IMG/VR virus record: IMGVR_UViG_3300035181_000357
Coordinates: 1-64,000 of that record
DNA: 64,000 nt
Strand: one strand, 5' to 3'
Part shown: one piece after another, positions 18,029 to 63,414 of the stretch
Position numbering within the stretch: position 1 is the stretch's first letter
How the letters are laid out: each line of letters begins with the position of its first letter
Translations under genes and position numbers: made by a program
Notes under the pieces: model-generated
What the model was told of the DNA's origin: nothing
The model's database searches: none
What the model saw: the letters and a program-made list of their open reading frames with translations, nothing else

Positions 18029-18352
18029 TTAAGCCTGGACCTTTTCTAGTTCACGAAGCTGTGAGCTAGCTAGGAACTTGATCTTACGCTTTGGCTGGCC
18101 CATCTTCTGCTCGCCAGTCTTAGGAACCTTAACCATCTTAGCTGGCTTGTGGGTTACACGGAACTGACCGAATCCATGGATCTTGAACTTGAAACCATCG
18201 GTAGCAACGTTAGCAGCTAGGATGTCATGGACGGCAGAGAGTACGGCTTCTACGGTTTCAGTAGCGGCCTTGGCGGTAGGAAGGTTTAGCTTTTCCTTTA
18301 CGAGAGCCTCTAGCTCTTTACGGTTAGCTTCTGTCTTTAGTAGTTCAGTCAT
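18029..18352 (-). CDS. HU/IHF-like DNA-binding protein
   Basis: NRKEL...V, IHGFGQFRV..KPAK...PKTGE......KRKIKF. Confidence 0.9.
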   Translation of the reverse strand: MTELLKTEANRKELEALVKEKLNLPTAKAATETVEAVLSAVHDILAANVATDGFKFKIHGFGQFRVTHKPAKMVKVPKTGEQKMGQPKRKIKFLASSQLRELEKVQA

Positions 18353-43921: not shown

Positions 43922-44260
43922 TTACTTGACTTCTTTTTCCAGATCAGCTTCTAAAGTAGCTAATTCCCTGATACTCTTCTCGTAATCTGCATCAAGCTTT
44001 GACATCTGCTGTCTGGCTCGAAGGTCCAGATCTAACATTTGTTTGAATAGAGGATCTAGTTCCTGAGGATGTGGTCTCTTAGAAAGAGCTTGAAGCATAG
44101 AAGTTCTATCAGCGATACTCCTCTTAAGATGGACTAGGCCAGATCGTAATGGTATTAAAGCACTTACAATCTGCTGAACTTCCTGGTATCTGGCTACCTT
44201 CTTTTTGAGTTCTCTAGTCTTCTTTTCAGCTTCTCTCTTTAACGCAGCTTCTGTTTTCAT
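43922..44260 (-). CDS. Coiled-coil hypothetical protein
   Basis: 112 aa, heptad-rich. Confidence 0.55.
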   Translation of the reverse strand: MKTEAALKREAEKKTRELKKKVARYQEVQQIVSALIPLRSGLVHLKRSIADRTSMLQALSKRPHPQELDPLFKQMLDLDLRARQQMSKLDADYEKSIRELATLEADLEKEVK

Positions 44261-47200
44261 TTCTTCCTTTTCTTAAACTCATCAGGAATATCTTTCTTAA
44301 AAACCTTATCGATAGCACTTCTCTTACCTTTGTAACCGAACACTACCTTTGAGTTTCCGATCCCCAGATACTTAATAAGTTCTTCGAAATCCTCTGGTCT
44401 TAGATCATCTCGAAGAAATGGAAACCCATCCTCATGATATTCATATTCAACAGGTTCTTCATCTTCTCTTCTTGGGATATGTGCTGGCTCTGCTACTTCT
44501 ATCTCCTCTTCCACCTCATCTGTCTCTACTACGAGTTTCATAACAGGTTTGATGATCGTAACATTAGGATTGCTAAGAGTTCCTAGGCGACCACCTGCTG
44601 GTAACTCTGGTCTATTCTTTGGATCTAATCCCATTCTCTCTTCATATTCAGCTATGGTTTCTAATTTTGAGTCATCTAGTTCCTGGTCTATACCCCAGAA
44701 CTCATCTAGTTGATAACATACGATCAATTTAATCCTGAGGGTTTTAACATCCTTATCCAGGTAGGATTTTAGCACCTGCTGGGCAGATTGGGTACGAGGA
44801 TGTAGGTTCTTCTCTAGATAAGATAAAGCCTTATCCCTCTTGTCCGGATCTTGTAGAGCCTCAAAAATCTTATTAAAGGATTTAGTCCCACCTGGTATAT
44901 ATTCTTCCAGGCCAGAAATTGCTGTCCAGGCCATTGGTTCATGTCCATCATCACCCGTCAGATGTTCTGTGACGTCCCAAGAACGACCATATTCTGTATC
45001 ACACTCAATAGGAACGATCCATTTCATCTTCTCGTGAAGATCACGAAGTCTCATCAACCTAGTCAACCTAGGAATGACGAATGGGACATATTCATTCTTT
45101 ACAGAATAGTCGATTTCATCGTGAACGCTACCGTGTAGCTCATAGACATTCTCTATACCTGGATCAGACTGGGACCAGTGTCGAATCCGATTCAAAGCCA
45201 TACGCATGAAATCACCAGCCAGACCCTGAAGAGGGATATTGATACTAACTCTCTGGATCTTACCGATAAACTTCTTGTAATCCTGCATATTTCTTACACC
45301 AGTAGATTTATCATAATACATGGTGTCTGCAGCTTTACGCAATCTGGCAATAGCACCTGGTGGAACATCTTCACCAGCCTTTTCTTGAGATTCTAGTTCT
45401 TTCAGAGAATTCTTTATCTCCCACCAACGGCGATAGTTCCTAGCATGCTCAGCATTTGGGTAATAAATCTTCTGAGCAGCCATTGCGGATTCAAATTTAA
45501 TGATTCTACCCGTTGCTGTCTTGCAGATCATACTCTCTTTAGCAATCTTCTGCTTATGATATACCCATTCTGCAAACTGTGGGACACCTTCCCAATACTT
45601 ATCAACCATGACTTTACACTCGTCGAAAGTAATTTCTTTGATTACCTTCTTCATCGACTCAAAGATGGTGTAGGCCGTACCACCATACAAAAGAGCGAAG
45701 TTCAAGATCTTGGCGAGCGATCTTAAGAATTTCTTTCTATCCTTTGGTGTCTTAGGATCAGAGAATTCAGGGAATACAGCTCTTGCTGTTAACGAGTGGA
45801 AGTCACCCTCACCTTCAAGGAATTCCTTAACGAAATTATCTTCTTTAGAGATATTAGCAGCCACACGCATTTCAATGTTGGAATAGTCTGTCGTAAAGAA
45901 TGTCCATCCAATCTTAGCAATGAACAAACTTCTAATATTCAGAATTTCTTCTGAATCGACCTTTTCAGACGTCGTATCTGGACCCTGAATGAACTCACAT
46001 GATGTACAAGATGGTACTAGACAGAACAAATCACCAAAGTATTCACCATAATGATTCCCTTTGATCCCTTTAGCTAGTTTCAAGGTCCCATCATCTTCTT
46101 TATTATAACAGGAAGGATGGAGGTCTTTTATATCATATTGGGCTTCTGGAACTGAGTTGATTCGTCGTCCCTGAACCCACTTATTACCTTCCACTCTCTT
46201 AATGGCTTGGATGTTAAGACCGAACCCTCCATCTTTCTCAAACTCACCACCAGTAGCTGACAAACGACCACCAGCTACTACGCACTGTCGAAGGTAGATT
46301 CGTGCCGTATGATCAACAGGATCATATGATAGATTTCCAGGATGAAGAGCAGCATATTCACGATATTCCATCAATTTCTTCAAGAACAGGTCATCTGGAT
46401 GAATCTTTAGCAATTCTTCTAAAGTCTCTGCATCGGTGGATGGTACCTTTGTCTTTTCACTCACTCTGAAAGGTTTAAATCCTTTATGCTTGAACAGAAT
46501 CTTGACTAACTGGATAGGAGAAGATGGATTAAAGACATCCCCGTCTTCACCTTCAATCTTCTTCCATTCTGCAATCTCTTCTAGCTCTTTCTTCAGAACT
46601 TCTAGTTTCCCGCCATGCCACTTGATTGTCTTCTTAAGCTTCTTCACATCAACATGGAAACGCTGACGCTCAATCCAGGTGATTGTGTCAATCAACTCAT
46701 GATCAATCTTATGTGCTAATTTTAATTCTCTGGAACTGTCTCGAAGCTCATCCCATAGGAGCCAAGTGCAGATAGCGTCACCTGCTGCATACCAGAGAGC
46801 GATGTCAGTGGGTACCCAGTTAAATGGAGCATGCTGTGATCGTAACGTAGTTTTTCCAGTTTCTGAGTTATAATAATCTGCCTTGACACTAGTCAAGGTC
46901 TTTAACTCAATCTGATCCATATCCAATCTTGTCTTGGACTGGAACTTCAAACCATCTGCAGCATGTCCTTTATCTCCCATATCTGCCTTGGGATCATCTA
47001 AGTATGCATCTACTTGAACATCTTCAATATATGGGTATTCTCTAATCAGAATGTTCATTAGAAGTTTAAGGACTTCTTTGTCGTATTTAGCATTGTAGAA
47101 GATCAAGAGACACTTATCGAAGAGTTCCTGTAGGATCTGCCTACATTCCTCTCTGTCTATATTGTTCCCATCCTCGTGAGTAATTGGAACATAGATACCT

Positions 47201-47589
47201 TCATACCCATTAGAGCTTAAACAGATACCTGCAATCTCATTCCTAATCTTATAGGAACCATCTGGTTGCATAATGATTCTGTTATCCAGACCAGTGGTCT
47301 CAGTATCCACTGCGATCGCTGGCATTCTTTCACCAGTACGAGCTACCTCATACTTCTCTCCAGACATAACTGATTCTGCCCAGACATGGAGTTCCTTGGC
47401 ACTAGTTATTAGTCTGAACGCCTTCTTATTCATCCATGGGAATTTGATTGAATCGATTCCGGCCTTCTGAATAGCGTCTACGTGTCTGTTGAACACAGAC
47501 CTTAGATCGTTGGGCAATTTTTCTTTCTTGGCTTTCTTGACCAACTTCATATCGTCAATAGATATGTCCTCGGTGACTACTCTAGACAT
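44257..47589 (-). CDS. polA: DNA polymerase family A with 3'-5' exonuclease
   Basis: Exo DTETTG, YNAKYD and YAAGD; motif A DYSNIEMR; motif B KILNFALLYG; motif C HGSVHDEI. Confidence 0.93.
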   Translation of the reverse strand: MSRVVTEDISIDDMKLVKKAKKEKLPNDLRSVFNRHVDAIQKAGIDSIKFPWMNKKAFRLITSAKELHVWAESVMSGEKYEVARTGERMPAIAVDTETTGLDNRIIMQPDGSYKIRNEIAGICLSSNGYEGIYVPITHEDGNNIDREECRQILQELFDKCLLIFYNAKYDKEVLKLLMNILIREYPYIEDVQVDAYLDDPKADMGDKGHAADGLKFQSKTRLDMDQIELKTLTSVKADYYNSETGKTTLRSQHAPFNWVPTDIALWYAAGDAICTWLLWDELRDSSRELKLAHKIDHELIDTITWIERQRFHVDVKKLKKTIKWHGGKLEVLKKELEEIAEWKKIEGEDGDVFNPSSPIQLVKILFKHKGFKPFRVSEKTKVPSTDAETLEELLKIHPDDLFLKKLMEYREYAALHPGNLSYDPVDHTARIYLRQCVVAGGRLSATGGEFEKDGGFGLNIQAIKRVEGNKWVQGRRINSVPEAQYDIKDLHPSCYNKEDDGTLKLAKGIKGNHYGEYFGDLFCLVPSCTSCEFIQGPDTTSEKVDSEEILNIRSLFIAKIGWTFFTTDYSNIEMRVAANISKEDNFVKEFLEGEGDFHSLTARAVFPEFSDPKTPKDRKKFLRSLAKILNFALLYGGTAYTIFESMKKVIKEITFDECKVMVDKYWEGVPQFAEWVYHKQKIAKESMICKTATGRIIKFESAMAAQKIYYPNAEHARNYRRWWEIKNSLKELESQEKAGEDVPPGAIARLRKAADTMYYDKSTGVRNMQDYKKFIGKIQRVSINIPLQGLAGDFMRMALNRIRHWSQSDPGIENVYELHGSVHDEIDYSVKNEYVPFVIPRLTRLMRLRDLHEKMKWIVPIECDTEYGRSWDVTEHLTGDDGHEPMAWTAISGLEEYIPGGTKSFNKIFEALQDPDKRDKALSYLEKNLHPRTQSAQQVLKSYLDKDVKTLRIKLIVCYQLDEFWGIDQELDDSKLETIAEYEERMGLDPKNRPELPAGGRLGTLSNPNVTIIKPVMKLVVETDEVEEEIEVAEPAHIPRREDEEPVEYEYHEDGFPFLRDDLRPEDFEELIKYLGIGNSKVVFGYKGKRSAIDKVFKKDIPDEFKKRKK

Positions 47590-48322: not shown

Positions 48323-49144
48323 TTATACCTTACTAGTCTTACGTGTGTAGATCTTCCTCTTGTTGGGGATCTTCTGAAGTCCCTTAGAGTACACACTAGC
48401 CAAGATACGGAGTCTCGACTTGAGTCTATTTAGTTCTTCCATCTTGAGTCCGGCAACTTCACAGATCTCAGACATAGAATTATTCTGCATGAACAAGGTA
48501 GCCGTCTTCAGCGTATCTGGCTCGTTCTTCTTAAGGAATTTCACGAATCCTTTAACGAAGTGGGTAGTATCCATAGAATCTGCAAAATTCAAATCGACCA
48601 AGTGGGAACAGTTGTGTTTGGTGAACAGGTCTTCAAGAGTCACTGTTCCTGGAACATAACTTTCTGCTGATTCTGGAGCATCGAAGGAGATCATCAAGGT
48701 ATTGCGTTGAGTAATCGGCTCTCTGGTTCTCTTTCTGATACAAATCATATACTTTCTAGTAAGTAGAAGATTGATGTAGAAGAAGAATTTTCCAGCAGAT
48801 TTGCCACCAATTCTGTCACCCGAGAATGACATGATTCGATCTTTGATTCCCTTGGCCTGGCCATTTTTAGAGACTGTAAGAATATATTCTACCATATCAT
48901 GGGTGAAATCTTCTAACAGTTCGTTCGGACAGCGGTGTCTGATAAGCCAAGTCTTTATATACTTTGGATATCTGTTATTAAACTCTTCGAAATTCATTGG
49001 AACAACAAAGTCATCATCAACAGACACGACTTCCTTGTAACTGAAATCCGATTTCTTCGTTGCTAAATCCAGTTCCTTCTTATCTTCTTCTGTCATCTCT
49101 TCGTCAAGGATAACATCATTTAGGTCTGACAAGCGTTCCTCCAT
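48323..49144 (-). CDS. Sigma70-family (ECF-like) sigma factor
   Basis: LLEDFTHDM...KFFFYI...Y...IRK region-2-like; SMSEICEVAGL...L.RLKSRL region-4 HTH. Confidence 0.6.
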   Translation of the reverse strand: MEERLSDLNDVILDEEMTEEDKKELDLATKKSDFSYKEVVSVDDDFVVPMNFEEFNNRYPKYIKTWLIRHRCPNELLEDFTHDMVEYILTVSKNGQAKGIKDRIMSFSGDRIGGKSAGKFFFYINLLLTRKYMICIRKRTREPITQRNTLMISFDAPESAESYVPGTVTLEDLFTKHNCSHLVDLNFADSMDTTHFVKGFVKFLKKNEPDTLKTATLFMQNNSMSEICEVAGLKMEELNRLKSRLRILASVYSKGLQKIPNKRKIYTRKTSKV

Positions 49145-51135: not shown

Positions 51136-52992
51136 TTAGAAGCGACGACCAGCCAACCTACCAGGACGACCTGGGACATCCTCTCGAGTCATGGCCTTTA
51201 TTCTCTCAGACATCCTATAATTTGATAATGAAGATACTTCAGGATCGAAGTCAAGCCCATGTAGTAAAGGATCTATATTATTACCAGAAATAATATCATC
51301 CATTTTATTAGGTTCATCTTTCATAAATTGGTTAGCTAGATATGCAACTAACGCTACGACATCACACATGTCATCGTGGGCACCCTTTTCATTGGGAGCC
51401 TGTACTCTAATCTGGTACTTACTGACTATGGTGGCTTCTACAGATTTTATTTCTTTCTCGAAAATAGGAACATCTGGGAACCTGATTGTACCTTGATCGA
51501 TGAATCCCTTAAGTGTATAATACATTTGAGAATTGATACCAGTATTTAAATGTACCAATTCAAAATTCTCAATATCATTCATCTTCAAAAGCTGGGTGAG
51601 CATAGACCCACCATGTTGGTCAGTACAACCCTTATAACAAGGCAGAACAGAATTAAGCCCGATCATCCAGTTGAGGATATCCTCTAAAGGAATCTCTGTA
51701 ACATGTTCATATGGAGCCTCACCAACCATCTTGCGGCCGATATAATCATAGTATAATTGAATCCCAACACCATCAACATATTCAAGATGCCCAATAGCTA
51801 GAGCCGTGGCATCGTGTTTCATACCAAGATCTAGTGCCCAGAAGTACAGCTTTGAAAATTTCTCTTCTTGATATCTAACAGTATTCTCTCGTCCTCTATC
51901 TATAGCTCGTTCAATAGATAGAACAGGTACGTAAGATTCAGCAGAGTCTAGAAACTGTCCACCATACTCAGCTTTCCAGGTTAGGGAAGCAGATATGGCC
52001 TTCTTTCTCAGGTATTCAGAGTTAGAACGAGGGTTCATCTCAGCAGATGAACACATGAGGGTAAAAATTCCAGAATCTGGGCCATGTTTCATAGCCTCGG
52101 CATGAAGATCGTAGGCTTTACCTTCACGCTTCCATGGGCTGGTAATGGTTAAGATCAGAGATTCTAATAATCCTGTCTCAGTACTGGTGAAGTTCATGGT
52201 AGCTGGAGCTGCTGCTTCATATACTTCATCAGAGTTTGAACCCTTCTCATTCCTGAAGTGAGCAAACTCGTCTAGTGCCAAGAAATATGAGCTGGGACCA
52301 CGTACAGCATTCGTGGTACAAGGCCAGGCACCTATCTTAATAGATGGGATAACATCACGTTTGTCTTTATCAGCTTCAGTTACGAACTCCATGCTCTTAG
52401 ATCCCGGAGTCTTTCTAAGGTATGGACTAAAGAATGGACAGGAGTTAATGTCTGATTTAAATTTATCGTATAGACGGTTAGCACCAGAATTATCTTGTGC
52501 CAGGAAAGTGAATTCTATTGGAGAACCTTCAACCAGACCGAAATGTTCATGAGGAGATCGTATAGATAGAAGTTTATATAGTTTGAAATCTGCGATAGCA
52601 GATACTAACTGGGATTTACCACCACGTCGGCCAGCAAAGATAACAGCTTCGTTGAATCCTCGTTCTGGGAGATCTTGCCAATCTTCTACGTTTATTCTAC
52701 CTTCACTATATAGATAATCTAGATATTCTCGTTCAGTAAAGGTGTAGAGAACTTCTTCTGCGAACTTATCTTTTACAATTATGGTCCCCTCTTTATAATC
52801 CAGGGGAACTCCCAAGATGCACTTGTATATAAATCTTTGAACTGGATATAGAGTTACCTTTGGTCCAGAATCCCCTTCTAAAAAATCTATACCATTTAAT
52901 ATATTAGAATTAACAGATATTTCACTATCTACGATTTGACCTAAGATTGATGATCTAGCCTGATGAGAAAATTTATTAATCTTTACTGCCAT
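51136..52992 (-). CDS. Terminase large subunit
   Basis: Walker A AGRRGGKS, Walker B LALDEF, ITSP coupling motif, nuclease WALDLG...DATA and HDD..D. Confidence 0.9.
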   Translation of the reverse strand: MAVKINKFSHQARSSILGQIVDSEISVNSNILNGIDFLEGDSGPKVTLYPVQRFIYKCILGVPLDYKEGTIIVKDKFAEEVLYTFTEREYLDYLYSEGRINVEDWQDLPERGFNEAVIFAGRRGGKSQLVSAIADFKLYKLLSIRSPHEHFGLVEGSPIEFTFLAQDNSGANRLYDKFKSDINSCPFFSPYLRKTPGSKSMEFVTEADKDKRDVIPSIKIGAWPCTTNAVRGPSSYFLALDEFAHFRNEKGSNSDEVYEAAAPATMNFTSTETGLLESLILTITSPWKREGKAYDLHAEAMKHGPDSGIFTLMCSSAEMNPRSNSEYLRKKAISASLTWKAEYGGQFLDSAESYVPVLSIERAIDRGRENTVRYQEEKFSKLYFWALDLGMKHDATALAIGHLEYVDGVGIQLYYDYIGRKMVGEAPYEHVTEIPLEDILNWMIGLNSVLPCYKGCTDQHGGSMLTQLLKMNDIENFELVHLNTGINSQMYYTLKGFIDQGTIRFPDVPIFEKEIKSVEATIVSKYQIRVQAPNEKGAHDDMCDVVALVAYLANQFMKDEPNKMDDIISGNNIDPLLHGLDFDPEVSSLSNYRMSERIKAMTREDVPGRPGRLAGRRF

Positions 52993-53193: not shown

Positions 53194-53964
53194 TTAGCTG
53201 CCATGGGTCACATCTACTACCTTTATCTGGTCTTTTACTGAATTCCAGTATTTCATCAGACTATCAGAATTTACATCTTTTATACTATCTGGGTGATTCC
53301 ATACCCAAGGTATGATATATAGCTTAGTAGGCCATATCACTCCATCTGAAGTAATAGCTGACGGCATCGTCTCTATCAACTGAATAGTTAGAGAATCTGG
53401 AATGATTTCGTCTTCTATGGCTTTTTTAGCATACCATACTAAGTCATCATAGAACACGGACTTCTTTTCGAACAGACCCTGCAGAATCGAATGAAATTTA
53501 TAATCTTTTATATTCTGATCCAAGGTGTCAATCAACCGTCTTACTAATGCTCTGTTCTTAGCGACCTCTTTACGAAAAGTCAGAGGTGTGGTATTGTGTA
53601 CATCGCTGACTACACCCTCATCCATGTCATAATAGCATAGTATGATATCTGCTATAGAATCTTCATCCATAGTCAAGTCATTAAATGCAGAACCTGGTAT
53701 TTCAAAGATATACAGATTATCATCATCTATAACCTGAGATATCCTGGTTACAGAGTATGACAGAGCCTGCTTAATAGAATTAGCAAAGTATATTCTGCCC
53801 TTTTGAGGCTCCATTTGCCCAGCTTCAAAGGAAATATCCTTAGATTTTAATCCTTCTTTTAGGATATTATCTGCAGCCTCTTTAGTAGTCCCGTGCCACC
53901 AGGTCCTAGATTTTATATTAGGAGTTGGAGATACAGCGATTCTTCTGGTGAAGAGTCTGGACAT
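53194..53964 (-). CDS. ADP-ribosyltransferase-fold protein
   Basis: WWHGT....I..EGL ... GRIYFANS...A..Y ... YIFEI ... DED, the H-Y-(E) ART pattern. Confidence 0.55.
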   Translation of the reverse strand: MSRLFTRRIAVSPTPNIKSRTWWHGTTKEAADNILKEGLKSKDISFEAGQMEPQKGRIYFANSIKQALSYSVTRISQVIDDDNLYIFEIPGSAFNDLTMDEDSIADIILCYYDMDEGVVSDVHNTTPLTFRKEVAKNRALVRRLIDTLDQNIKDYKFHSILQGLFEKKSVFYDDLVWYAKKAIEDEIIPDSLTIQLIETMPSAITSDGVIWPTKLYIIPWVWNHPDSIKDVNSDSLMKYWNSVKDQIKVVDVTHGS

Positions 53965-53969
53965 ACATT

Positions 53970-56588
53970 CTAATCTTTCTTCTTGATGATGTACTTGACC
54001 TTTAAAGTCATAGTCTCTATATCGAGTTTCTCAGCACGAACAAATACTTCATATGTGAATCCAGCATCGCCTTCATCATTCCATACAGCAGCTTGTGCCC
54101 AGGCACCATTCAATGCATCAATCATATCAGTATCATTTAGACCATCAGCGAGGGCCTTGAAGCCAAAACCAGTCTGATCAACGGGGAGTATTCCAGCATT
54201 AGCTAGCAGAAGACCAGTCTCTAGATCGTTGAGTCTGAGAGTCCATTCCATTGGAGTGTCAGTGAATAATGGCTTTTGTGTAACCTGGAATCCAGAAACT
54301 AGAGTGGCAGCAATCTGGCCGCAGATTCTCTTAAGAACATCAGCTAATTTTACTTTGTTCTCTGCTGAAGCAGTCTTCGAAGCCTTTTTAGAAGCCATCA
54401 ATAGCGAACTAGGATTGATATCATCATGTGGGGCATTAAACATGTTGGTGAATCCAGGACCACGGAGGTTGAGTTCCTTACGTAGAGGAGCACCTTGTGG
54501 TTGACTTGGTCCGAGACCCATACCTGCTGGACCCTTTGTAGCATCACCTTCATCGGTCTTCTCTAACTGCATCTGTAACATTTCAGGTGTTGGAGAATGG
54601 GTGAATTCTCTTCCAACTGGTTGAATAGCAAGCTGTTCTGCCATTTCAGGATAGAAACCTTCTAGAACCTGACCAGGAACCATCAACGTGAAAGCTTTCT
54701 TCTCCAGGAATGATTCTTTCTTATCTACAGGAGGATCAGACCATGCTTCAAATCTCCTAAAGTTGTTCTTGTCAGAAAGCCCCTTGGTGAACTTCTCTCT
54801 TGCCTTTTCTGTCGAGAACGTACGTTCTTTGTTTACGACCTGATCCTTTTTATTAAATTCAGACCATTGAACCCCCCAATTACCATCAGCAGAGGCTGTT
54901 ACAGGTTTCTTTTCTTCCTCTTCCTCATGTTGGAACCAATCATCAGCTGACATTGGTAGTTCTTCTCTCAAAATCTCTTCAGAAGAAGCTTCTTTTAACA
55001 GTCCATGCATTTGTGCATACTCGATTGCAGATCCAAGCCAATCATTAGGGTTTAGATATCCGTCTTCGACGAGTTCTCCAACTTCTTCATCAGACCAGGA
55101 AGCAATCTCGGTGTCACCCTTATACAGGGTTACTTGAGCACGATCTCTCTCAAACCAGGTATCAACTCTGTATTCATCAGAGTCAGCAGATTCTACTCTC
55201 TTCAACTCGTCCTTCTGATCTTCGCCTTCAGCGAACTGATCTTCATCAGTTCCTTCTTCTAAGACATCTACTAGCTTCTTGTGTTCTTCTATGAATTCAT
55301 CAGCTGGCATTTCAACCACGATCTTAGCACCATGATCATCAGCAAGAGTTAGAGCTCCAGGAAGACCCTTTACCTGAGCAATCTCATCAGAGGCTGAAGG
55401 CATGTTGGAGTAATAATCCTGGATGATGTGTTGTACATCGAGAGAACCATTCTTGCCACCCGACAGGATCCAATCCTCTAAGGTTAGGAGATCATTCTGC
55501 ATCTTCTCGTAACGAGGTCCTTGACTCTCGTCTCCAGACTTATCCATCTTTCTAAGTTCTACTCTCAGATACTTGGTCACCATCTTTGCATCAGCTTCTA
55601 CATCATCAGATGCTTTCTTTGGATCTGGACCATCAACCATCTCTGGTCCAACAGTTTCCTTAGATCCTGGGGCACCATAATCTGGACGATTACGAAGGCC
55701 AGTTTCAGCAGATATTTTAGTCTTAGTATCTAAGATATCTTCAATCTTACTGAATAGCTTAAGTTCTTCTGGCTCCATGATACTCTCTTCGAGTTCTTCG
55801 ATGTGAGCAGCGGATAATCTGATCTTCTTTCTCTGAACTTCAGCTTTTACCAAGGAAGAAGCGATGAGTCTGAATGTGGTCTTAATTTTAAGATCCTTAA
55901 GTGCATCTTTTCCGATCGACTTGCCTTCTCCTAGACTGACCTTAATGTCCTCAGCTTCCACCTCAGATCCTTTACCAAGTTCTGGGTAAGCGTTGCCATA
56001 ACTAGGAGTCTTAAAGACATGCTGTTGAAGTGGGATAGATTCCACACGGAATGCACCAGTCAAGGCTTTGATCTGTTCGAAAGAGTTTGATAAGGCTGGG
56101 TTATACATGGCACAGAATACCTTGTCTCTAAGGTCTAGGAACAGGGTGTCTTCGTTGAAGTGGATGACCTTAATATCTGAGATATTTGCCCAAGCTGGAT
56201 GGAAGACTACTAAATCACATACTTCACCATTGGAATTGGTGAATAACATTTCTTTAGCCATCTTTAAAGTGTCTTTTGACATATCTTCAGAGGCTAGAAA
56301 CTGTAGTCTGGCTTCAATGGCTTCTTCCTGATTTAAGGAAGAGAATACACCAGAAGCTAGGAGAGCGATTGGGAAGTTTTCTGCTTTCTTACATACAGAG
56401 GCTGGTACTACATAGATATCACCAATAACGATATCTTCTCTATATGATTTTTTGCAGATCTCTAACTTAGCTACATTTCCTTTGTTAGCTTCTTTAGCAC
56501 CCTGAGTCTTGATAGCCTCAGCTACCTGGGCGATCATCTCGTCAGGTGCAGTGAAAGAAAGATATGATCTATATGCCTTAGTTGCCAT
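53970..56588 (-). CDS. Large acidic mosaic head/internal protein
   Basis: 872 aa of discrete segments separated by KKAS, KISA, LKEAS, VTASA, EKKAF and KKASKTASA. Confidence 0.55.
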   Translation of the reverse strand: MATKAYRSYLSFTAPDEMIAQVAEAIKTQGAKEANKGNVAKLEICKKSYREDIVIGDIYVVPASVCKKAENFPIALLASGVFSSLNQEEAIEARLQFLASEDMSKDTLKMAKEMLFTNSNGEVCDLVVFHPAWANISDIKVIHFNEDTLFLDLRDKVFCAMYNPALSNSFEQIKALTGAFRVESIPLQQHVFKTPSYGNAYPELGKGSEVEAEDIKVSLGEGKSIGKDALKDLKIKTTFRLIASSLVKAEVQRKKIRLSAAHIEELEESIMEPEELKLFSKIEDILDTKTKISAETGLRNRPDYGAPGSKETVGPEMVDGPDPKKASDDVEADAKMVTKYLRVELRKMDKSGDESQGPRYEKMQNDLLTLEDWILSGGKNGSLDVQHIIQDYYSNMPSASDEIAQVKGLPGALTLADDHGAKIVVEMPADEFIEEHKKLVDVLEEGTDEDQFAEGEDQKDELKRVESADSDEYRVDTWFERDRAQVTLYKGDTEIASWSDEEVGELVEDGYLNPNDWLGSAIEYAQMHGLLKEASSEEILREELPMSADDWFQHEEEEEKKPVTASADGNWGVQWSEFNKKDQVVNKERTFSTEKAREKFTKGLSDKNNFRRFEAWSDPPVDKKESFLEKKAFTLMVPGQVLEGFYPEMAEQLAIQPVGREFTHSPTPEMLQMQLEKTDEGDATKGPAGMGLGPSQPQGAPLRKELNLRGPGFTNMFNAPHDDINPSSLLMASKKASKTASAENKVKLADVLKRICGQIAATLVSGFQVTQKPLFTDTPMEWTLRLNDLETGLLLANAGILPVDQTGFGFKALADGLNDTDMIDALNGAWAQAAVWNDEGDAGFTYEVFVRAEKLDIETMTLKVKYIIKKKD

Positions 56589-57091: not shown

Positions 57092-58414
57092 TTACTCTAT
57101 GTCTCCAACGTTCCCATAGGAACCGAGGTCAATGTCATGACCCTTTAATTCCTTGATCTCAACATCGAAATCTTGAAGCTTAGAAGAGTCTAATCCGACT
57201 TGTGTATTTAAGGTGTTTCCATCATAAGAAGGATCGCCGTTGGCAATCTTATTTGATGATACCTTATCTAGACCAGGGAAAGTAAGAAGAGTTCCACCGG
57301 TTAGACCACAATGCATACCATTACGATATGTGCAAGAAGCACATTTCTTGGCACCGACGATGGCATTCTTAGAAGCCAGTTTACCATGTAGGTACTTACA
57401 ATCAACACGATCAAGATTGATCTTTGACCCGGTCTTCTTTAGGTCATCGATATATCTCTTAGCAGCTACTTTAACCTTTAAGGTTCCGAACTTCTCACGA
57501 GCTTCTACGAAAGCAGCCTCAAAGGATTTCCCACTATCAATATCCTGTCTGAAATTATCAGAAGAGATACTATCTTCAGTGAATGTAACCTTGTCTCCAG
57601 CACTTCTGATAGAATATTGCTCATCTTGAGCTCTTGGAGCCTGGACCTGAACCTCATCCTGAACACCATTATGAATATCAGTCATAGCCTTCTTGCTAAC
57701 CTGCTTACCCAACTGGGCTGCTATTTTATTGACAACTTCCTGCAATTCTTTCTTGCTTGCTACGATAGGAAGTTTATAAAGATTACAACGTCCACCAGCA
57801 CAATGGCTGCATGAGTCACAAGCTGATATCTTCTTAACAGAAGCGGCTTTAACTGAACCTTCTCGCTTAATCTTATTGAAGGTTTCGATACAACCCTTAG
57901 AACCAGAACTCTTCATAAAGTGGTTTGGCTCAATGAAAGAAAGACCAACCAGGCCAGCTCTGTCGTTGAGATAATCGGCTGACATAGTCTTATTGAAGAT
58001 AGCCAACTCTGCGAGTTTATTCATCTTGGATTCGATCTTTTCAGGACTAAATCCTAGGTGAAGGAGGTCATCAATTCTCTTCAATACTTCAGAATCTGTT
58101 AACATCTTCTTCTCTAGACCCTCAATACTGGATCCAGACGCAGCCTTTAAAGCAGAGGCTAAGACAGATGTATCATCGTCGATAGCTTTCTCTGCTCGAC
58201 CTTGCCAGTCCTCATGATTGGGGATATTGGTTGCAGTTCTACCAGTGTTGGTGTGGTGACTCTTTCCACCTAACTCTTGTACCAAGTTATCAGATTTATC
58301 CTGAGATATGGCTTTGAATCCATCGCCACTCTTCTTCTCTTCCTTTGTATTTTCATACGAAGGAGCTACATCGTCAAGGATTTGATCTATAATAGATGCG
58401 TAAAATTTTGTCAT
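57092..58414 (-). CDS. Head-region protein with duplicated Cys4 motifs
   Basis: ACDSCSHCAGGRC and KCASCTYRNGMHC repeats. Confidence 0.55.
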   Translation of the reverse strand: MTKFYASIIDQILDDVAPSYENTKEEKKSGDGFKAISQDKSDNLVQELGGKSHHTNTGRTATNIPNHEDWQGRAEKAIDDDTSVLASALKAASGSSIEGLEKKMLTDSEVLKRIDDLLHLGFSPEKIESKMNKLAELAIFNKTMSADYLNDRAGLVGLSFIEPNHFMKSSGSKGCIETFNKIKREGSVKAASVKKISACDSCSHCAGGRCNLYKLPIVASKKELQEVVNKIAAQLGKQVSKKAMTDIHNGVQDEVQVQAPRAQDEQYSIRSAGDKVTFTEDSISSDNFRQDIDSGKSFEAAFVEAREKFGTLKVKVAAKRYIDDLKKTGSKINLDRVDCKYLHGKLASKNAIVGAKKCASCTYRNGMHCGLTGGTLLTFPGLDKVSSNKIANGDPSYDGNTLNTQVGLDSSKLQDFDVEIKELKGHDIDLGSYGNVGDIE

Positions 58415-58815: not shown

Positions 58816-59562
58816 TTAATGGTTAGCTCTGGATACCATAATGTGATCGAAAGCTGGATCTTCTACGTCAATGTAGAAGGAACCTAGTAAATCAGGATCT
58901 TCTTTAAACAAGAAACTCATCTTTTCTAGTTTCCGTTTACTGTATCCCTGACCATTAGCACTCGCTTTGTCAATGAGGCCATATATCATTGCACCTAACG
59001 ACAGACTTAGTTCGTCATCCTTATCTAATAGAGCCTTTGAAACCTGCGATAGAACTCTTCGTACATCAGGTCTGTGTACATTGCTCTTCTTGGCTACAAT
59101 GTTAAAACTTCTATACTTTCTATAGTCTTCTATCAGAGTAGAAGTTTTTACACCTTTAAGCACATTCTCTAGTCCATTTGTAGACAGAACAGTACTAATT
59201 AGACCAGAATCAGGATTGGCCCCATATATAATTATGGCCCCAAGCTTCTTGATGGCCATACGAATCTTAAAGCTGCATATTGTTTGAGTGGATCTGTGTA
59301 TCTTTGCCAGGCACCATTGAGGCTTATTGATCATGTAATAACTTAGGAGTAATTCCTGGTCTTCAATCGAGATATTTCTTAAAATCTTTAGAAAATCTGG
59401 AAAATTCTCCTTTATATACATTGAGATATGTTCTTCAATCAAATCATTTTGAGTCTCTAACGAGACTGTTTGATCTTGAAACTTCTCATCACCACTCTCT
59501 TCGTATGCATCTACTGATCGTTTAGAGATTATTGCGTCGAAGTACGGGCTGATTTCGGGCAT
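58816..59562 (-). CDS. Sigma70 region-4-like / tandem HTH regulator
   Basis: LRNISIEDQELL..YY...KPQ..LAK.....Q.......RMAIKKL, plus a second HTH SFNIVAKKSNVHRPDVRR. Confidence 0.6.
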   Translation of the reverse strand: MPEISPYFDAIISKRSVDAYEESGDEKFQDQTVSLETQNDLIEEHISMYIKENFPDFLKILRNISIEDQELLLSYYMINKPQWCLAKIHRSTQTICSFKIRMAIKKLGAIIIYGANPDSGLISTVLSTNGLENVLKGVKTSTLIEDYRKYRSFNIVAKKSNVHRPDVRRVLSQVSKALLDKDDELSLSLGAMIYGLIDKASANGQGYSKRKLEKMSFLFKEDPDLLGSFYIDVEDPAFDHIMVSRANH

Positions 59563-59663: not shown

Positions 59664-59697
59664 ATAAAAAGTCTCACATTTTAGTGAGACTTTTTAT
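59664..59697. terminator. Bidirectional intrinsic terminator
   Basis: ATAAAAAGTCTCAC-ATTTTA-GTGAGACTTTTTAT. Confidence 0.85.
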
Positions 59698-59714: not shown

Positions 59715-62342
59715 TTACTCAGCTACTAATTCAGGAGCTAGTTCAACATCCGATACAAATTCGCTTTCAGAACCTTCTTCAGAATCCTCTAGTTCCACAC
59801 CGAGATTATCGGCTAGATTCTCAACACCCTCAGCGAGATGGTCTAGATTACTATAGATCTCATTTAAGGACAAGCTAACTTCTTCTGGTTCCTCATCGGC
59901 TACACGTCTGAGACCAACAGCAAACTTCTTAGCAATACGCTTCTTAGCAATACGCTTCTTAGCAATACGCTTCTTAGCAATACGCTTCTTAGCTAGTTTG
60001 CCTTCCTTGGCTTCACCTTCTAGAGCCTCTTCCTCTAAGGATTCACCCTCTTCAGGAACAAGATCGTCAGGAGTCAGATTTAGATTCTCAGCAAGAGCAT
60101 CTAGAGCTTCTACCTGTTCCATGAACTTATCACGGAGTTCGGCAATGGCTTCACCTAGAGCTTCTGGCTCTTCCTCAGCAATACGCTTTAAAGTAGCGAA
60201 CTTGGAGGCAGCAGTCTTGGCTTCAGACAAGGCTTCTGCTTTTGCAGCTGCTTCCTTTTTCTTGGCGATAATCTGTGATAATCTTCCCATTGGTTTCTCC
60301 TGTGAACTGGTTACAGCGCTATCTTGCTTTTTAACAGACTTTTCTTCGTCTTCCATCTTGACTAGTTTCTTGGTATAATCGTTGACCAATTTGACCAGCA
60401 GATTGCTCTTATCGATGTTACCTTCTTTAATGAACTTGGTGATGCACTCTCTTAGGTTTACAATGGCCTTCTTGTAATATGAGAATGACTTCTGAGTCTT
60501 AGCTTCGAAATCCTTCCAGATCTCGTCGCTGACTTCATTTGTCAGAGTAGCATCAAAGAGAATAGCTAGATTTGGACCAACTTTCTTACCCATTGTTCTG
60601 GTAAGCCATGGGAAGAATTCAGCCTTGAACTCTTTAAGATCAGAAGAGCTCTCTAACTCAGTGTGGTCGTCAAGAGTTGGCTTGGTATCGAAAATATTAT
60701 AGGTCTCGTCACCAGTTCCAAATTCTGGCTGTACTTCCTGGTTCTTGATCTCAACCTTCTTCTTCTCTTCACCAGTCTCTGGATCGATCTCAACGGTCTT
60801 GTAAACCTTACCATAACCATAGTGTTCTCCGACCCAATCTCTGGCCTTGGATACAGAATAGCTGAACATCTTCTTCAAGAAAGTCGTTACCTGCTTCTCT
60901 AGTGGGTTGTCCTTGTCAGGAGCTCTGTTAGGATCAAACTTTAACAGAGTCTTCAACTGATACAAGTGAGTAATGATCATGTGGTGAGCAGCTTCGTCAC
61001 GCAGATCCTGGTCAGCAATAACCTTCTTGTAGATACTCTCCAAGTATGAACTCCAGTTCATATCCTCATCTACAGGGAGCCCAGCTTCCCTGATAGCAGT
61101 CTTGACATACAAGTCAAAGTCTTTGTTGTAGGAGGTGATCATGAGGTTTGAGAATCTTCTTAAGGTAGAGCCGAGGAGATTTGTTAAACTTGCTAGATGG
61201 GTTTTATTTAAGGTTTCTATTGAGCCGTCAAGATATCTTGCTTGAATTCTGAGATCATCAGTGGTTCGGGCAGCAGCGAGTACGCGGAACGGACGAGAGC
61301 CTGATGGCACCACATAGGACCCAAGCTTAAAGGCCTTCTTTAGACTTGCAATATTGGGTTCCATTGTTTCTAAGAAATTAGAAACTTCTTGGAAGTACTC
61401 TTCTTCATTCTGTGTAGCATTATAATAGGCCGAATCATAATTGTCTAAGTTCTCTTCGAAGTCACCAGCTTGGCCGTATTCTTCATACTTATCAAATGCG
61501 TGTAAGAATTCATATAGTTCAGATAAACCTAATTGGAAATCACTATATTCACTCTCTGTCATATCAAGCCACTGCATTACCTGAGCATCGTCGTTGGCAT
61601 CGATGAAATTCTGCCAGGCTTCACAGTCAGATGTTTCTTCCAAATCCTGAGGTAGATTCTTGACTACCTCTACTGGAATTTCATCCATATCGATATCTAA
61701 TGACATCTGGTGGGATTCTAGATCGAATCCTGGGAATCTCTCCTCGATTTTTCCTACATCATGGGAATTATCATCACAGAAACGGGACCAGGCATTACTC
61801 GTACCACTAATGTCAGTGTTATTCATGACGTCTTCAGCATCATCAAAGGAATGATATTCCTGGCCTGACTCTTCTGCATAATTCTCAAAAGCGGCATTGA
61901 CCAGTACTAATACTTTATTCACTTCTCCGAGAGTGCCCTCTTTAGGTAACTCGTTGAGGAGCATATCCCCTTGCCCATTTCCAGCATAGCCGTTTCCAAC
62001 CCACTGGCCGAATCCACCATTCTGAACCTGATAATGAAGCTTGGCGAGTGCAAACAACATCTTATGGGTATCGGAAGGAAGCTGCTTAAGCATCTCCTGC
62101 ATACTTTTATCACCCATCTGTTGCCAGTTCTTGTGAATCTCGCTGAGGGCCTTCTGAAGATAATCTTCATAGAACCCTGCGAACTTCGCATGAGGATTTA
62201 CAGCCTTAGACGATACAGGCTTCTCACGACCTTCTAGACCACGGTCTACAGAACCATCACTGGTTTCCTTTGCTTTCAGATGCTCGAAAGCTTCCGATGC
62301 AACAACGGTCTTAAATATATCTGCGGATAGTTTGTGACGCAT
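59715..62342 (-). CDS. Multidomain acidic protein: DMP19/DUF4375-like + sigma-like + scaffold-like repeats
   Basis: YQVQNGGFGQWVGNGY...DNYDSAYY; DEAAHHMI...KFDPNR...TTFL; duplicated EEPE..L.E......LA.NL C-terminal helices. Confidence 0.55.
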   Translation of the reverse strand: MRHKLSADIFKTVVASEAFEHLKAKETSDGSVDRGLEGREKPVSSKAVNPHAKFAGFYEDYLQKALSEIHKNWQQMGDKSMQEMLKQLPSDTHKMLFALAKLHYQVQNGGFGQWVGNGYAGNGQGDMLLNELPKEGTLGEVNKVLVLVNAAFENYAEESGQEYHSFDDAEDVMNNTDISGTSNAWSRFCDDNSHDVGKIEERFPGFDLESHQMSLDIDMDEIPVEVVKNLPQDLEETSDCEAWQNFIDANDDAQVMQWLDMTESEYSDFQLGLSELYEFLHAFDKYEEYGQAGDFEENLDNYDSAYYNATQNEEEYFQEVSNFLETMEPNIASLKKAFKLGSYVVPSGSRPFRVLAAARTTDDLRIQARYLDGSIETLNKTHLASLTNLLGSTLRRFSNLMITSYNKDFDLYVKTAIREAGLPVDEDMNWSSYLESIYKKVIADQDLRDEAAHHMIITHLYQLKTLLKFDPNRAPDKDNPLEKQVTTFLKKMFSYSVSKARDWVGEHYGYGKVYKTVEIDPETGEEKKKVEIKNQEVQPEFGTGDETYNIFDTKPTLDDHTELESSSDLKEFKAEFFPWLTRTMGKKVGPNLAILFDATLTNEVSDEIWKDFEAKTQKSFSYYKKAIVNLRECITKFIKEGNIDKSNLLVKLVNDYTKKLVKMEDEEKSVKKQDSAVTSSQEKPMGRLSQIIAKKKEAAAKAEALSEAKTAASKFATLKRIAEEEPEALGEAIAELRDKFMEQVEALDALAENLNLTPDDLVPEEGESLEEEALEGEAKEGKLAKKRIAKKRIAKKRIAKKRIAKKFAVGLRRVADEEPEEVSLSLNEIYSNLDHLAEGVENLADNLGVELEDSEEGSESEFVSDVELAPELVAE
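59926..59993. repeat. Perfect 15-nt coding repeat x4.5 encoding (KKRIA)4
   Basis: TTCTTAGCAATACGC repeated exactly. Confidence 0.95.
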
Positions 62343-62634: not shown

Positions 62635-63414
62635 CTAATGCGACTTCACAGGAGTTGTTCGTTCTACGACCTTTTCTTCTACCTCTACGGGTTTCTTTAC
62701 TACCTTCTTTTTCTTCTCTGGAACAGGTTTTTCTTCTACAGGCTCTTCCACTTCTTCCACTACTGGTATCTCTTCGATAGGCTCTTCTACAGGAGGGGGT
62801 TGTTCTACTAATTTCTCTTTTACGACAGGCTTGTTAATCTCAACAATTTCGTCGTCATCATCCTCAATAGGTTTGATAGTCGGAACCGTGTCATCATAAC
62901 GCTCTAACGTCTTCTCCACATTCTTATCCTTGAATTTCTCTAACAGCCTCTTTAGAAATGGATTTACTCTATCACTAACGATTTTGAGGTGTTTACAGAT
63001 TACGAACTGGAATCGTCTTGGATCAGTTGGAGCCTGATACTTATCTCGGGGAGTTCCTTCTAATGAGTCTCCTTGACCTAAGTTCCATTGTGCTCCCCAA
63101 TATAAGAAAGCTGGACAGCTACAACTGACTTTAACATCTAGATCTTTGATTGTAGATTTGTCAACAACCTGAGCCGTATCAAATCTGATTAATACAGTGT
63201 GGCCTCTGGGGTCAGAATCTTTCTCTTTGCATTTTACTTTGTATGTTAGTAGCATCTCATCAAGATCTACATTCTTAACAGACATATTACAGTTCTTAGC
63301 CTTAGCTACTGAGAAATCAGAAGTTAGTTGAACCAGATCTTTGATACTAAAAGCCACTTTATACCGGGATTGAGCTACCCAGTCACCGACTTTTGTTGTA
63401 ATCCAGACACTCAT
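62635..63414 (-). CDS. SWIM-type zinc-finger protein
   Basis: VSCSCPAF.YWG......CKH. Confidence 0.75.
   Translation of the reverse strand: MSVWITTKVGDWVAQSRYKVAFSIKDLVQLTSDFSVAKAKNCNMSVKNVDLDEMLLTYKVKCKEKDSDPRGHTVLIRFDTAQVVDKSTIKDLDVKVSCSCPAFLYWGAQWNLGQGDSLEGTPRDKYQAPTDPRRFQFVICKHLKIVSDRVNPFLKRLLEKFKDKNVEKTLERYDDTVPTIKPIEDDDDEIVEINKPVVKEKLVEQPPPVEEPIEEIPVVEEVEEPVEEKPVPEKKKKVVKKPVEVEEKVVERTTPVKSH

What the first reader, a model, noticed from the sequence alone, without database searches (positions are those of the whole stretch)
61380..62120. DMP19/DUF4375-like DNA-mimic domain with a large acidic insertion
Seen: LHYQVQNGGFGQWVGNGY and, ~190 aa later, DNYDSAYY bracket a very D/E-rich insert. 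Known: Neisseria DMP19 is an acidic DNA mimic that binds a transcription factor and HU; phage DNA mimics such as Ocr inhibit restriction-type defences. Inference: a virion-delivered anti-defence or nucleoid-modulating mimic; the phage also encodes its own HU.
Basis: partly seen in the sequence, partly recalled or inferred. Interest (0 to 1): 0.6.

Follow-up and report, generated by a model that had tools for sequence, protein, structure and literature searches.

The report
Acidic DMP19-like domain on phage factor
A very acidic DMP19-type "DNA-mimic" domain with a 110-residue insertion really is there, but it is the N-terminal module of an 875-residue jumbo-phage protein whose conserved core looks like an RNA-polymerase-binding, sigma-like factor, so it more likely serves transcription takeover than acts as a free virion-delivered anti-restriction protein.

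Summary
The ORF 59715..62342 (-) encodes 875 aa. Residues about 50-340 are a true DMP19-like (PF14300) domain. That leaves an insertion of about 110 aa. AlphaFold2 predicts it as a folded helical subdomain, not a disordered tail. Net charge of the domain stays at -41 to -43 (pI about 4.1) in all seven orthologues, although insert identity falls to 17-23%.

The phage does encode HU. Nothing shows virion delivery or anti-restriction. Only one clade carries this domain on its N-terminus. The underlying protein family is conserved in uncultured jumbo phages and in Tunturiibacter phage Tunturi_5.

By fold only, with modest Z and no sequence support, the core resembles:
- a CarD/UvrD-type RNA polymerase-binding Tudor domain;
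- a sigma-2-like domain;
- a sigma-4-like HTH domain.

No phage RNA polymerase was found in the 210-kb record.

My best reading is a host-RNAP takeover factor whose polyanionic module masks a DNA-binding surface, like sigma-70 region 1.1. A trans-acting decoy remains a serious rival, because standalone forms occur in other phage contigs. This is a new variant of a known kind.

The parts
59715..62342 (-). Whole gene, 875 aa (P0001), stop codon included
   Evidence: A single ORF. Full-length orthologues P0002-P0007 at 39-99% identity share the same architecture.
62196..62342 (-). N-terminal leader, aa 1-49, conserved in orthologues, no predicted fold
   Evidence: 40-70% identity among orthologues. 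Model residues 1-14, which overlap its end, have pLDDT below 50.
61323..62195 (-). DMP19-like (PF14300) domain including the insert, aa 50-340; pI 4.07, net charge -43
   Evidence: Pfam; PDB profile search, top hits 3vjz/3wur; VIA-align Z 9.7 to 3wur_A; 502 relatives; charge.
61986..62039 (-). Family motif 1, LHYQVQNGGFGQWVGNGY (aa 102-119)
   Evidence: N, G, G, W and Y are invariant in 50 family members. The motif aligns to DMP19 'LDSQVEEGGFVQLIASGY'.
61473..61847 (-). Acidic helical insertion, about aa 166-290 (boundaries +/- 10 aa); net charge about -29
   Evidence: An HMM of 104 short family members matches aa 60-177 and aa 279-333 only. Motif spacing is 189 aa against a family median of 73. 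The region is confidently helical in the AlphaFold2 model. Charge is conserved at 17-56% identity.
61422..61448 (-). Family motif 2, LDNYDSAYY (aa 299-307)
   Evidence: The family consensus is LDxLDxxYY, with the Y nearly invariant. It forms a second HMM stretch at aa 279-333, i-E 1.2e-4 in a small search. The piece alone does not reach Pfam.
61179..61334 (-). Tudor/SH3-like beta domain, aa about 337-388
   Evidence: VIA-align: CarD RNAP-interacting domain 4kbm_B Z 6.5, 4l5g Z 6.1; PcrA/UvrD Tudor 5dma Z 6.0, 7egs_B Z 5.5.
61050..61130 (-). Most conserved motif of the core family, YNKDFDLYVKxAIRxAGLPVDxxMNWS (aa 405-431)
   Evidence: G, L, P, D and W are invariant, and Y, V and K nearly invariant, in 26 core homologues.
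60816..61112 (-). Sigma-2-like helical domain, aa about 411-509 (fold only)
   Evidence: VIA-align: SigK 4nqw Z 5.3 and ShbA 9m84 Z 5.3. Two-domain alignments to SigL 6dv9_F (148 aa, Z 6.4), SigB 8x6g_H and sigma-A 5e18_F. No sequence support.
60417..60653 (-). Sigma-4-like HTH domain, aa about 564-642 (fold only), after a low-confidence linker at aa 510-565
   Evidence: VIA-align: CnrH 4cxf Z 6.6 (rmsd 2.8, 66 aa), sigma-H 3mzy Z 6.2, SigF 8jzt Z 5.8, SigW 5wuq Z 5.7.
60075..60203 (-). C-terminal repeat 1, KFATLKRIAEEEPEALGEAIAELRDKF...AENLNL (aa 714-756)
   Evidence: Conserved in orthologues and in distant homologues P0008-P0011. It sits on a separate neighbouring gene in L007.
59925..59993 (-). 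Perfect 15-nt x 4.6 tandem repeat encoding (AKKRI)n, aa 784-806
   Evidence: Tandem Repeats Finder. The 99%-identical P0002 has one unit fewer.
59790..59927 (-). C-terminal repeat 2, KFAVGLRRVADEEPEEV...ADNLGVEL (aa 806-851)
59664..59697 (-). Terminator-like hairpin (14-bp stem, T-rich tail) just after the stop codon
   Evidence: This is a consensus scan only.

Best explanation
The gene encodes a modular jumbo-phage factor for taking over the host RNA polymerase (RNAP).

Its conserved core (aa 335-670) has three parts in order: a CarD/UvrD-type Tudor domain, a sigma-2-like helical domain and a sigma-4-like HTH domain. I infer that this core docks on the host RNAP, since no phage RNAP is seen.

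One clade has added an N-terminal DMP19-family domain, enlarged by a folded helical insert of about 110 aa. Selection keeps the net charge of this domain at about -42. I infer that the module works as a protein DNA mimic held in cis. It would cover a DNA-binding surface until promoter DNA displaces it, as the acidic region 1.1 does in sigma-70. That surface could be the factor's own HTH or sigma-like surfaces, or the RNAP DNA channel.

Shown: DMP19-family membership, the insertion, the conserved charge, the fusion architecture and its clade restriction. Inferred: RNAP binding, sigma-like action and the cis-masking mechanism.
For: DMP19 membership:
- Pfam matches.
- Reciprocal profile search: 502 hits, and 47 of 50 sampled hit PF14300.
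- Both family motifs are present.
- Fold match to 3wur_A at Z 9.7 over 144 of 162 residues.

Insertion and charge:
- Motif spacing is 189 aa against a family median of 73.
- The family HMM matches in two split stretches.
- Net charge is -41 to -43 and pI 4.05-4.17 in seven orthologues, while insert identity drops to 17-23%.

Architecture:
- In the distant homologues P0008-P0031 the core starts at residue 1-31. They lack the N-domain.

Sigma/RNAP-like core:
- About a third of the top 50 rows in an all-PDB structural scan are sigma factors.
- Among the 50 rows listed, every alignment that spans both helical domains is to a sigma factor, with sigma-2 and sigma-4 in the right order. These are SigL, SigB, SigH, AlgU, the sigma-factor chain of the phiEco32 gp79-dependent complex (9m7y_F), Thermus sigma-A and the chain in the RNA-guided transcription complex 9n9q_C.
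- The best Tudor matches are the RNAP-binding CarD and UvrD/PcrA domains.
- ESM-Atlas nearest clusters are named sigma-70 family, score 0.89.

Context:
- No RNAP genes were found in the 210-kb record.
- Jumbo phages without an RNAP are known to rely on phage-encoded sigma factors (PMC7824862).

Precedent:
- DMP19 itself blocks an HTH transcription factor by occupying its DNA-binding site (PMC3384305).
Against: - The sigma likeness is by fold only, with Z 5.3-6.6. That is within the range the tool calls common for helical proteins. The core model has a mean pLDDT of only 67.
- Pfam sigma models, PHROGs, a PDB sequence profile search and hhalign against E. coli sigma factors give nothing significant.
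- The phage has another candidate sigma, 48323..49144, homologous to Tunturi_5 gp3.
- Standalone DMP19-like proteins, short and long forms, occur in other phage-like contigs. The domain can therefore act on its own.
- The record is only 69% complete, so an RNAP gene could lie outside it.
- The Tunturi_5 homologue is labelled 'virion structural protein' by Phold.
Confidence: 0.4

Rival explanations
1. The DMP19-like domain is a trans-acting decoy. It binds host DNA-binding proteins such as HU or other nucleoid proteins, restriction-modification enzymes or other defence nucleases, and keeps them off phage DNA. The rest of the protein serves only as a carrier, possibly for packaging into the virion and injection.
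For: - DMP19 binds HU and an XRE-family regulator by DNA mimicry (PMC5722371, PMC3384305).
- Standalone relatives exist in phage-like contigs. Two long-form paralogues sit beside a SAM synthetase and a methyltransferase. Short forms sit in arrays of small ORFs typical of early regions.
- Gene neighbours are homologous to Tunturi_5 gp350, labelled 'DarB-like antirestriction', and one neighbour has a weak ART/PARP hit.
- gp345 is labelled 'virion structural protein' by Phold.
Against: - There is no proteomic or sequence evidence for packaging.
- The labels are automatic fold-based transfers, and PHROG HMMs do not match.
- The fold searches returned no match to the domain of Ocr, ArdA or any other known anti-restriction mimic.
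- The stable fusion to a sigma/Tudor-like core in six divergent orthologues argues for a function tied to that core.
Confidence: 0.27
2. The domain shares ancestry and fold with DMP19 but is not a DNA mimic. It is a general polyanionic module. It might act as an intramolecular counter-ion or chaperone for the protein's own basic segments (the (AKKRI)n repeat and Lys-rich linkers), or for basic phage proteins such as the phage HU. It might also simply aid solubility.
For: - The property conserved in the insert is bulk charge rather than sequence.
- Short family members are generally acidic, median pI 4.4, with an acidic loop at the same position.
- DNA mimicry has been shown for only one family member.
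- The protein carries basic repeats, and the phage encodes HU.
Against: - The insert is predicted as an ordered helical subdomain, not a floppy acidic tail.
- The (AKKRI)n repeat is present only in the two closest sequences. It cannot explain a domain conserved across the whole clade.
Confidence: 0.2
3. The whole protein is a virion component, such as an internal head or ejection protein. The resemblance of its core to sigma and Tudor domains is a coincidence of small common folds.
For: - The Phold label on Tunturi_5 gp345.
- The gene lies in a conserved block next to the large terminase, and next to tail-fibre genes in Tunturi_5.
- The sigma-like Z-scores are modest.
Against: - No PHROG or Pfam structural family matches.
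- The enrichment of sigma factors, and specifically of RNAP-binding Tudor domains, among the top fold matches is hard to get by chance.
Confidence: 0.12

Closest known systems
Neisseria meningitidis DMP19 (NMB0541; PDB 3VJZ, 3WUR; Pfam PF14300 / DUF4375)
   Same: - Same superfamily by profile.
- Same two motifs.
- Same all-alpha fold, Z 9.7 over 144 of 162 residues at 22% identity.
- Similarly acidic: pI 4.07 here, and below 4.5 for DMP19 (PMC3384305).
   Different: - DMP19 is a free 19-kDa bacterial protein. Here the domain is the N-terminal third of an 875-aa phage protein.
- It carries an extra acidic helical subdomain of about 110 aa between the motifs.
- Partner binding (NHTF, HU) is untested here.
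Sigma-70 region 1.1 (the acidic N-terminal domain of primary sigma factors, which occupies the RNAP DNA channel and autoinhibits free sigma; from established knowledge)
   Same: - An acidic, helical module at the N-terminus.
- It lies upstream of sigma-2-like and sigma-4-like domains. This is an analogy of position and charge only.
   Different: - There is no homology, and the fold is different (DMP19-like).
- It is about three times larger.
- A Tudor domain lies between it and the sigma-like part.
- The sigma identity of the core is itself unproven.
ECF and group-3 sigma factors and phage sigma factors (for example Mtb SigL 6dv9_F, S. aureus SigB 8x6g_H, and chain 9m7y_F of the phiEco32 gp79-dependent open complex)
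   Same: - A two-domain helical arrangement, sigma-2 then linker then sigma-4, is aligned in order over 126-155 residues at Z 5.4-6.4.
- Single-domain sigma-4 matches reach Z 6.6.
   Different: - There is no detectable sequence similarity to Sigma70_r2 or Sigma70_r4.
- The protein has an extra Tudor domain, an extra C-terminal twin-repeat domain and the N-terminal DMP19-like domain.
CarD and the UvrD/PcrA C-terminal Tudor domains (RNAP beta-subunit binders)
   Same: - A small beta-barrel of about 50 aa, Z 5.5-6.5, rmsd 2.5-2.9.
   Different: - The Tudor/SH3 fold is very common. 53BP1, EF-P and chromodomains score almost as well.
- RNAP binding is therefore only a lead.
Phage and plasmid anti-restriction DNA mimics (T7 Ocr, ArdA)
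   Same: - A polyanionic helical protein encoded by a mobile element.
   Different: - The fold searches returned no match of the domain to these proteins.
- No functional test was done.
Tunturiibacter phage Tunturi_5 gp345, labelled 'virion structural protein' by Phold
   Same: - It is homologous to the core (28% identity over aa 342-583) and to the C-terminal repeats.
- Gene order is the same for gp344 to gp350 and then the terminase.
   Different: - gp345 has no DMP19-like domain. Its core starts near residue 21-38.

Membership tests
DMP19-like (Pfam PF14300 / DUF4375) | Significant match to the family HMM | tested here: met
   The match is borderline for the window protein alone: 21.2-23 bits against a cut-off of 25, and 25.5 bits in the six-frame scan. 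All six orthologous domains match, best E 3.8e-6. The reciprocal search gives 502 hits at E<=1e-3, and 47 of 50 sampled hits match PF14300 down to 1.8e-16.
DMP19-like (Pfam PF14300 / DUF4375) | Conserved motifs QVxNGGFxQ...NGY and LDxxD..YY | tested here: met
   Both are present, at aa 102-119 and aa 299-307. The N, G, G, W and Y columns are invariant in 50 family members.
DMP19-like (Pfam PF14300 / DUF4375) | All-alpha DMP19 fold | tested here: met
   An AlphaFold2 model (pLDDT 77) against 48,161 PDB representatives gives 3wur_A at Z 9.7, rmsd 4.0, 144 of 162 residues, with the next hit at Z 5.4. Foldseek alone was weak, prob 0.51.
DMP19-like (Pfam PF14300 / DUF4375) | Small free-standing single-domain protein (typical hits are 125-185 aa, with motifs about 73 aa apart) | tested here: not met
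   The domain is about 290 aa with motifs 189 aa apart, and it is fused to 535 further residues. This marks it as a variant architecture, not as a non-member.
DNA mimic in the functional sense (DMP19, Ocr, ArdA) | Strongly acidic surface | tested here: met
   pI is 4.05-4.17 and net charge -41 to -43 in seven orthologues. This is at sequence level only.
DNA mimic in the functional sense (DMP19, Ocr, ArdA) | Carboxylates spaced like DNA phosphates, and competition with DNA for a DNA-binding protein | not testable with these tools
   This needs a structure with electrostatics, plus pull-down and EMSA experiments.
Sigma-70 family (for the core, aa 335-670) | Match to Sigma70_r2 or Sigma70_r4 sequence models | tested here: not met
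   Pfam gave no hit for 26 family members even at E<=10. The six-frame scans of the genome found no match at this gene: none for Sigma70_r2, and only a weak sub-threshold Sigma70_r4 match elsewhere in the record. hhalign against E. coli sigma factors gave probability below 1%.
Sigma-70 family (for the core, aa 335-670) | Sigma-2 and sigma-4 folds in order, joined by a linker | tested here: inconclusive
   Many sigma factors top the structural scan, but at Z 5.3-6.6 and on a model with pLDDT 67.
Sigma-70 family (for the core, aa 335-670) | Binds RNAP core enzyme and directs promoter-specific initiation | not testable with these tools
   This needs biochemistry. The host is unknown.
   No PHROG or Pfam structural family matches. 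The only support is an automatic Phold label on Tunturi_5 gp345. Proteomics is not available.

The most novel reading that the evidence does not exclude
A jumbo-phage sigma-like RNAP-takeover factor has recruited an unrelated DNA-mimic fold (DMP19) and expanded it with a new acidic subdomain. The result would be a convergent substitute for sigma-70 region 1.1, a built-in anti-sigma or 'gatekeeper' of the DNA channel. In sister phages the same mimic is still a separate gene. This would be a Rosetta-stone case showing that phage DMP19-like proteins are regulators of sigma or other HTH factors rather than anti-restriction proteins.
Probability: 0.2. Interest if true: 0.8.

Novelty: new variant of a known kind. 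Interest (0 to 1): 0.55.

Why it matters
- DMP19 is one of about a dozen characterised protein DNA mimics, and it is known only as a small Neisseria regulator.
- Here the same fold turns up as hundreds of phage-associated relatives. In one jumbo-phage clade it is an enlarged, charge-conserved module fused to a conserved protein that looks like an RNA polymerase-binding, sigma-like factor.
- If the fusion marks a functional pair, it gives a concrete and testable target for the whole phage DMP19-like family: a sigma-like or HTH factor, or the RNAP cleft.
- It would also give a handle on how a large, almost wholly uncultured jumbo-phage group without its own RNAP redirects host transcription. Tunturi_5 is the only isolate.

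Tried and rejected
- **Word search, N-domain alone:** it found nothing. The exhaustive profile search was needed and found 502 relatives.
- **Foldseek:** the run against the PDB gave only a weak DMP19 row. The run against BFVD viral models gave nothing.
- **ESM Atlas:** it was uninformative for the N-domain. The Atlas fold search of the core gave only TM 0.2-0.3 rows, to RapA and UvrD helicases and to a viral sigma.
- **C-terminal piece alone (aa 280-345 and orthologues):** no PF14300 hit.
- **Sigma test by sequence:**
  - Pfam on 26 core homologues.
  - PHROGs.
  - PDB sequence profiles. The best hit was FliS at E 0.009, which I judge spurious.
  - hhalign against RpoE, against an alignment of six E. 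coli sigma factors, and against the two neighbouring phage ORFs. All gave probability below 1%. The alignments were collinear with sigma-2 and sigma-4.
- **Complex prediction, N-domain against core:** 'no answer', score 0.00. This counts neither for nor against binding.
- **Megablast of 24 kb of the window against phage records:** no match.
- **Readings I rejected:** the insert as a disordered low-complexity tail, because the model shows ordered helices. The fusion as a gene-calling artefact, because six divergent orthologues keep it.
Full report
**What is at the coordinates**

The finding lies inside one long ORF on the minus strand, 59715..62342, which encodes 875 aa (P0001). LHYQVQNGGFGQWVGNGY is aa 102-119 (61986..62039). 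LDNYDSAYY is aa 299-307 (61422..61448), 189 residues later. Residues 161-300 contain 39 Asp/Glu and 5 Lys/Arg.

The window is the first 64 kb of a 210,611-bp IMG/VR virus record that CheckV estimates to be 69% complete. This fits a jumbo phage of roughly 300 kb. Nearby genes include:
- the large terminase, 51136..52992;
- the portal, 41613..43868;
- a DNA polymerase, 44257..47589;
- a helicase and a UvsX-like recombinase.

**Is it really DMP19-like?**

Yes. Five lines of evidence agree.

1. Pfam PF14300 is the top hit for the protein, at 21-23 bits against a cut-off of 25. It scores 25.5 bits in the six-frame scan. It matches all six orthologous N-domains, best E 3.8e-6.
2. A sequence profile of the domain puts DMP19 (3vjz, 3wur) first among PDB chains.
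3. An AlphaFold2 model of aa 50-345 has a mean pLDDT of 77. Aligned to 48,161 PDB representatives, it gives DMP19 (3wur_A) as the single outlier: Z 9.7, rmsd 4.0 A, 144 of 162 residues, 22% identity. The next hit is at Z 5.4.
4. An exhaustive profile search of 1.84 billion representatives finds 502 proteins at E<=1e-3, mostly 130-180 aa long. Of 50 sampled hits, 47 match PF14300, down to 1.8e-16.

**The insertion**

In family members the two motifs are a median of 73 aa apart (interquartile range 65-81). In this clade they are 177-189 aa apart.

I built an HMM from 104 short family members. It matches P0001 in two pieces, aa 60-177 and aa 279-333. This places an insert of about 110 aa at a position where short members already have an acidic loop.

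The insert is predicted as ordered helices with good confidence, not as a disordered tail.

Across seven orthologues the N-domain net charge stays at -41 to -43 and the pI at 4.05-4.17. Over the same set, insert identity falls to 17-23%. Charge itself appears to be under selection.

Long-spacer forms also exist as separate proteins: P0032 (308 aa), P0033 (274 aa), P0034 (461 aa) and P0035 (401 aa).

**What the domain is attached to**

Full-length orthologues P0002-P0007 (39-99% identity) keep the whole architecture.

More distant homologues (P0008-P0031) come from contigs of up to 435 kb. They include the protein of Tunturiibacter phage Tunturi_5, the only cultured relative. They share only the core (aa about 335-670) and the C-terminal twin repeats. 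In them the core starts at residue 1-31. The DMP19-like domain is therefore a clade-specific N-terminal addition.

Gene order is conserved with Tunturi_5 from gp344 to gp350 and then the terminase gp1. In one phage (L007) the C-terminal repeat domain sits on the next gene.

**What the core looks like**

No Pfam, PHROG or PDB sequence match exists for the core.

An AlphaFold2 model built from 12 sequences has a mean pLDDT of 67. It shows a small beta domain, two helical domains and a disordered linker between them.

In the all-PDB structural scan the beta domain best matches the RNAP-interacting Tudor domains of CarD and UvrD/PcrA, at Z 5.5-6.5. Generic Tudor domains score nearly as well.

The helical domains match sigma factors:
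- Sigma-4 of CnrH (Z 6.6), sigma-H, SigF and SigW.
- Sigma-2 of SigK and ShbA.
- Both domains in the right order, over 126-155 residues, for SigL, SigB, SigH, AlgU, Thermus sigma-A and chain 9m7y_F of the phiEco32 gp79-dependent open complex.

ESM-Atlas feature neighbours are named sigma-70 family at a score of 0.89, which is a lead only.

These Z-scores are modest. hhalign against E. coli sigma factors is not significant, although the alignment is collinear. I therefore treat 'sigma-like, RNAP-associated' as a supported lead, not as a finding.

The context fits this lead:
- No multisubunit or T7-type RNAP is detectable in the 210-kb record.
- Jumbo phages without an RNAP are known to use phage-encoded sigma factors (PMC7824862).
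- ORF 48323..49144 is homologous to Tunturi_5 gp3, which Phold labels a sigma factor.

**Mechanism**

DMP19 is an acidic protein. It blocks the DNA-binding site of an XRE-family HTH regulator and of HU (PMC3384305, PMC5722371).

Here an enlarged, charge-conserved version is fused upstream of a Tudor, sigma-2-like and sigma-4-like core. The simplest reading is a tethered DNA mimic. It would mask the factor's own DNA-binding surfaces or the RNAP channel until promoter DNA displaces it. This is the role the acidic region 1.1 plays in sigma-70, which I cite from established knowledge and only as an analogy.

- In its favour, standalone short and long forms occur in phage-like contigs. One pair sits beside a SAM synthetase and a methyltransferase. 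Neighbours here carry DarB-like and ART-like labels.
- Against it, 'virion-delivered' has no support beyond an automatic Phold label on a homologue that lacks the domain.

A predicted-complex test of N-domain against core gave no answer. It counts neither way.

**Verdict**

This is a new architectural variant of a known family: DMP19-like, with an acidic helical insert, fused to a conserved jumbo-phage factor. The DMP19 family appears to be widespread in large phages. That was not described in the papers I could search, where the only mobile-element mention concerned conjugative elements. Function remains inferred.

Noticed in passing
window 59925..59993 (-): A perfect 15-nt x 4.6 tandem repeat inside the gene encodes (AKKRI)n. 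The 99%-identical protein P0002 has one unit fewer, so the copy number varies between near-identical phages. More distant orthologues lack the repeat.
   Followed up: partly
window 62635..63414 (-): This 259-aa protein has, by eye, a SWIM-type CxC...CxH zinc-finger motif and a Pro/Glu-rich acidic tail. It has no Pfam or PHROG hit. It is conserved at 46-64% identity in L005 and L007, just upstream of the gene studied.
   Followed up: partly
window 48323..49144 (-): This 273-aa ORF lies next to the primase and DNA polymerase. It is homologous (28% identity, E 1e-26) to Tunturi_5 gp3, which Phold labels an RNA polymerase sigma factor. It has no Pfam or PHROG sigma hit by sequence.
   Followed up: partly
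window 53194..53964 (-) and 53970..56588 (-): The 256-aa protein has a weak PARP/ADP-ribosyltransferase hit (E 0.0016). It lies between the large terminase and an 872-aa protein. Both ends of that protein are homologous to Tunturi_5 gp350, labelled 'DarB-like antirestriction' by Phold. This may be a host-takeover cluster.
   Followed up: no
window 18029..18352 (-): A phage-encoded HU/IHF-type protein of 107 aa matches PF00216 at 55.8 bits.
   Followed up: yes
window 57092..58414 (-): This 440-aa protein has two Cys-rich CxxCxxC...C motifs, seen by eye. It is conserved in Tunturi_5 as gp348 (33% identity) and has no family match.
   Followed up: no
L007 8001..11642: In this 248-kb phage contig the core is a 492-aa protein. 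The C-terminal twin-repeat domain lies on the adjacent 720-aa gene. The family therefore shows fission or fusion of domains.
   Followed up: partly
contig of P0036 (no DNA) and L020: Long-form DMP19-like genes occur unfused in related jumbo phages. P0036 (338 aa) lies about 6.7 kb upstream of a [66 aa][756 aa] pair that resembles the window's [65 aa][875 aa] pair. P0034 (461 aa) lies next to a primase and a DNA polymerase that is 52% identical to the window's.
   Followed up: partly
window 59664..59697 (-): A 14-bp-stem hairpin with a T-rich tail follows the stop codon directly. This suggests the gene ends a transcription unit. It comes from a consensus scan only.
   Followed up: no
window 58816..59562 (-): This 248-aa downstream neighbour is 47% identical to Tunturi_5 gp346, which Phold labels 'exonuclease'. 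It has no Pfam or PHROG match here. By eye its middle part resembles an HTH.
   Followed up: partly
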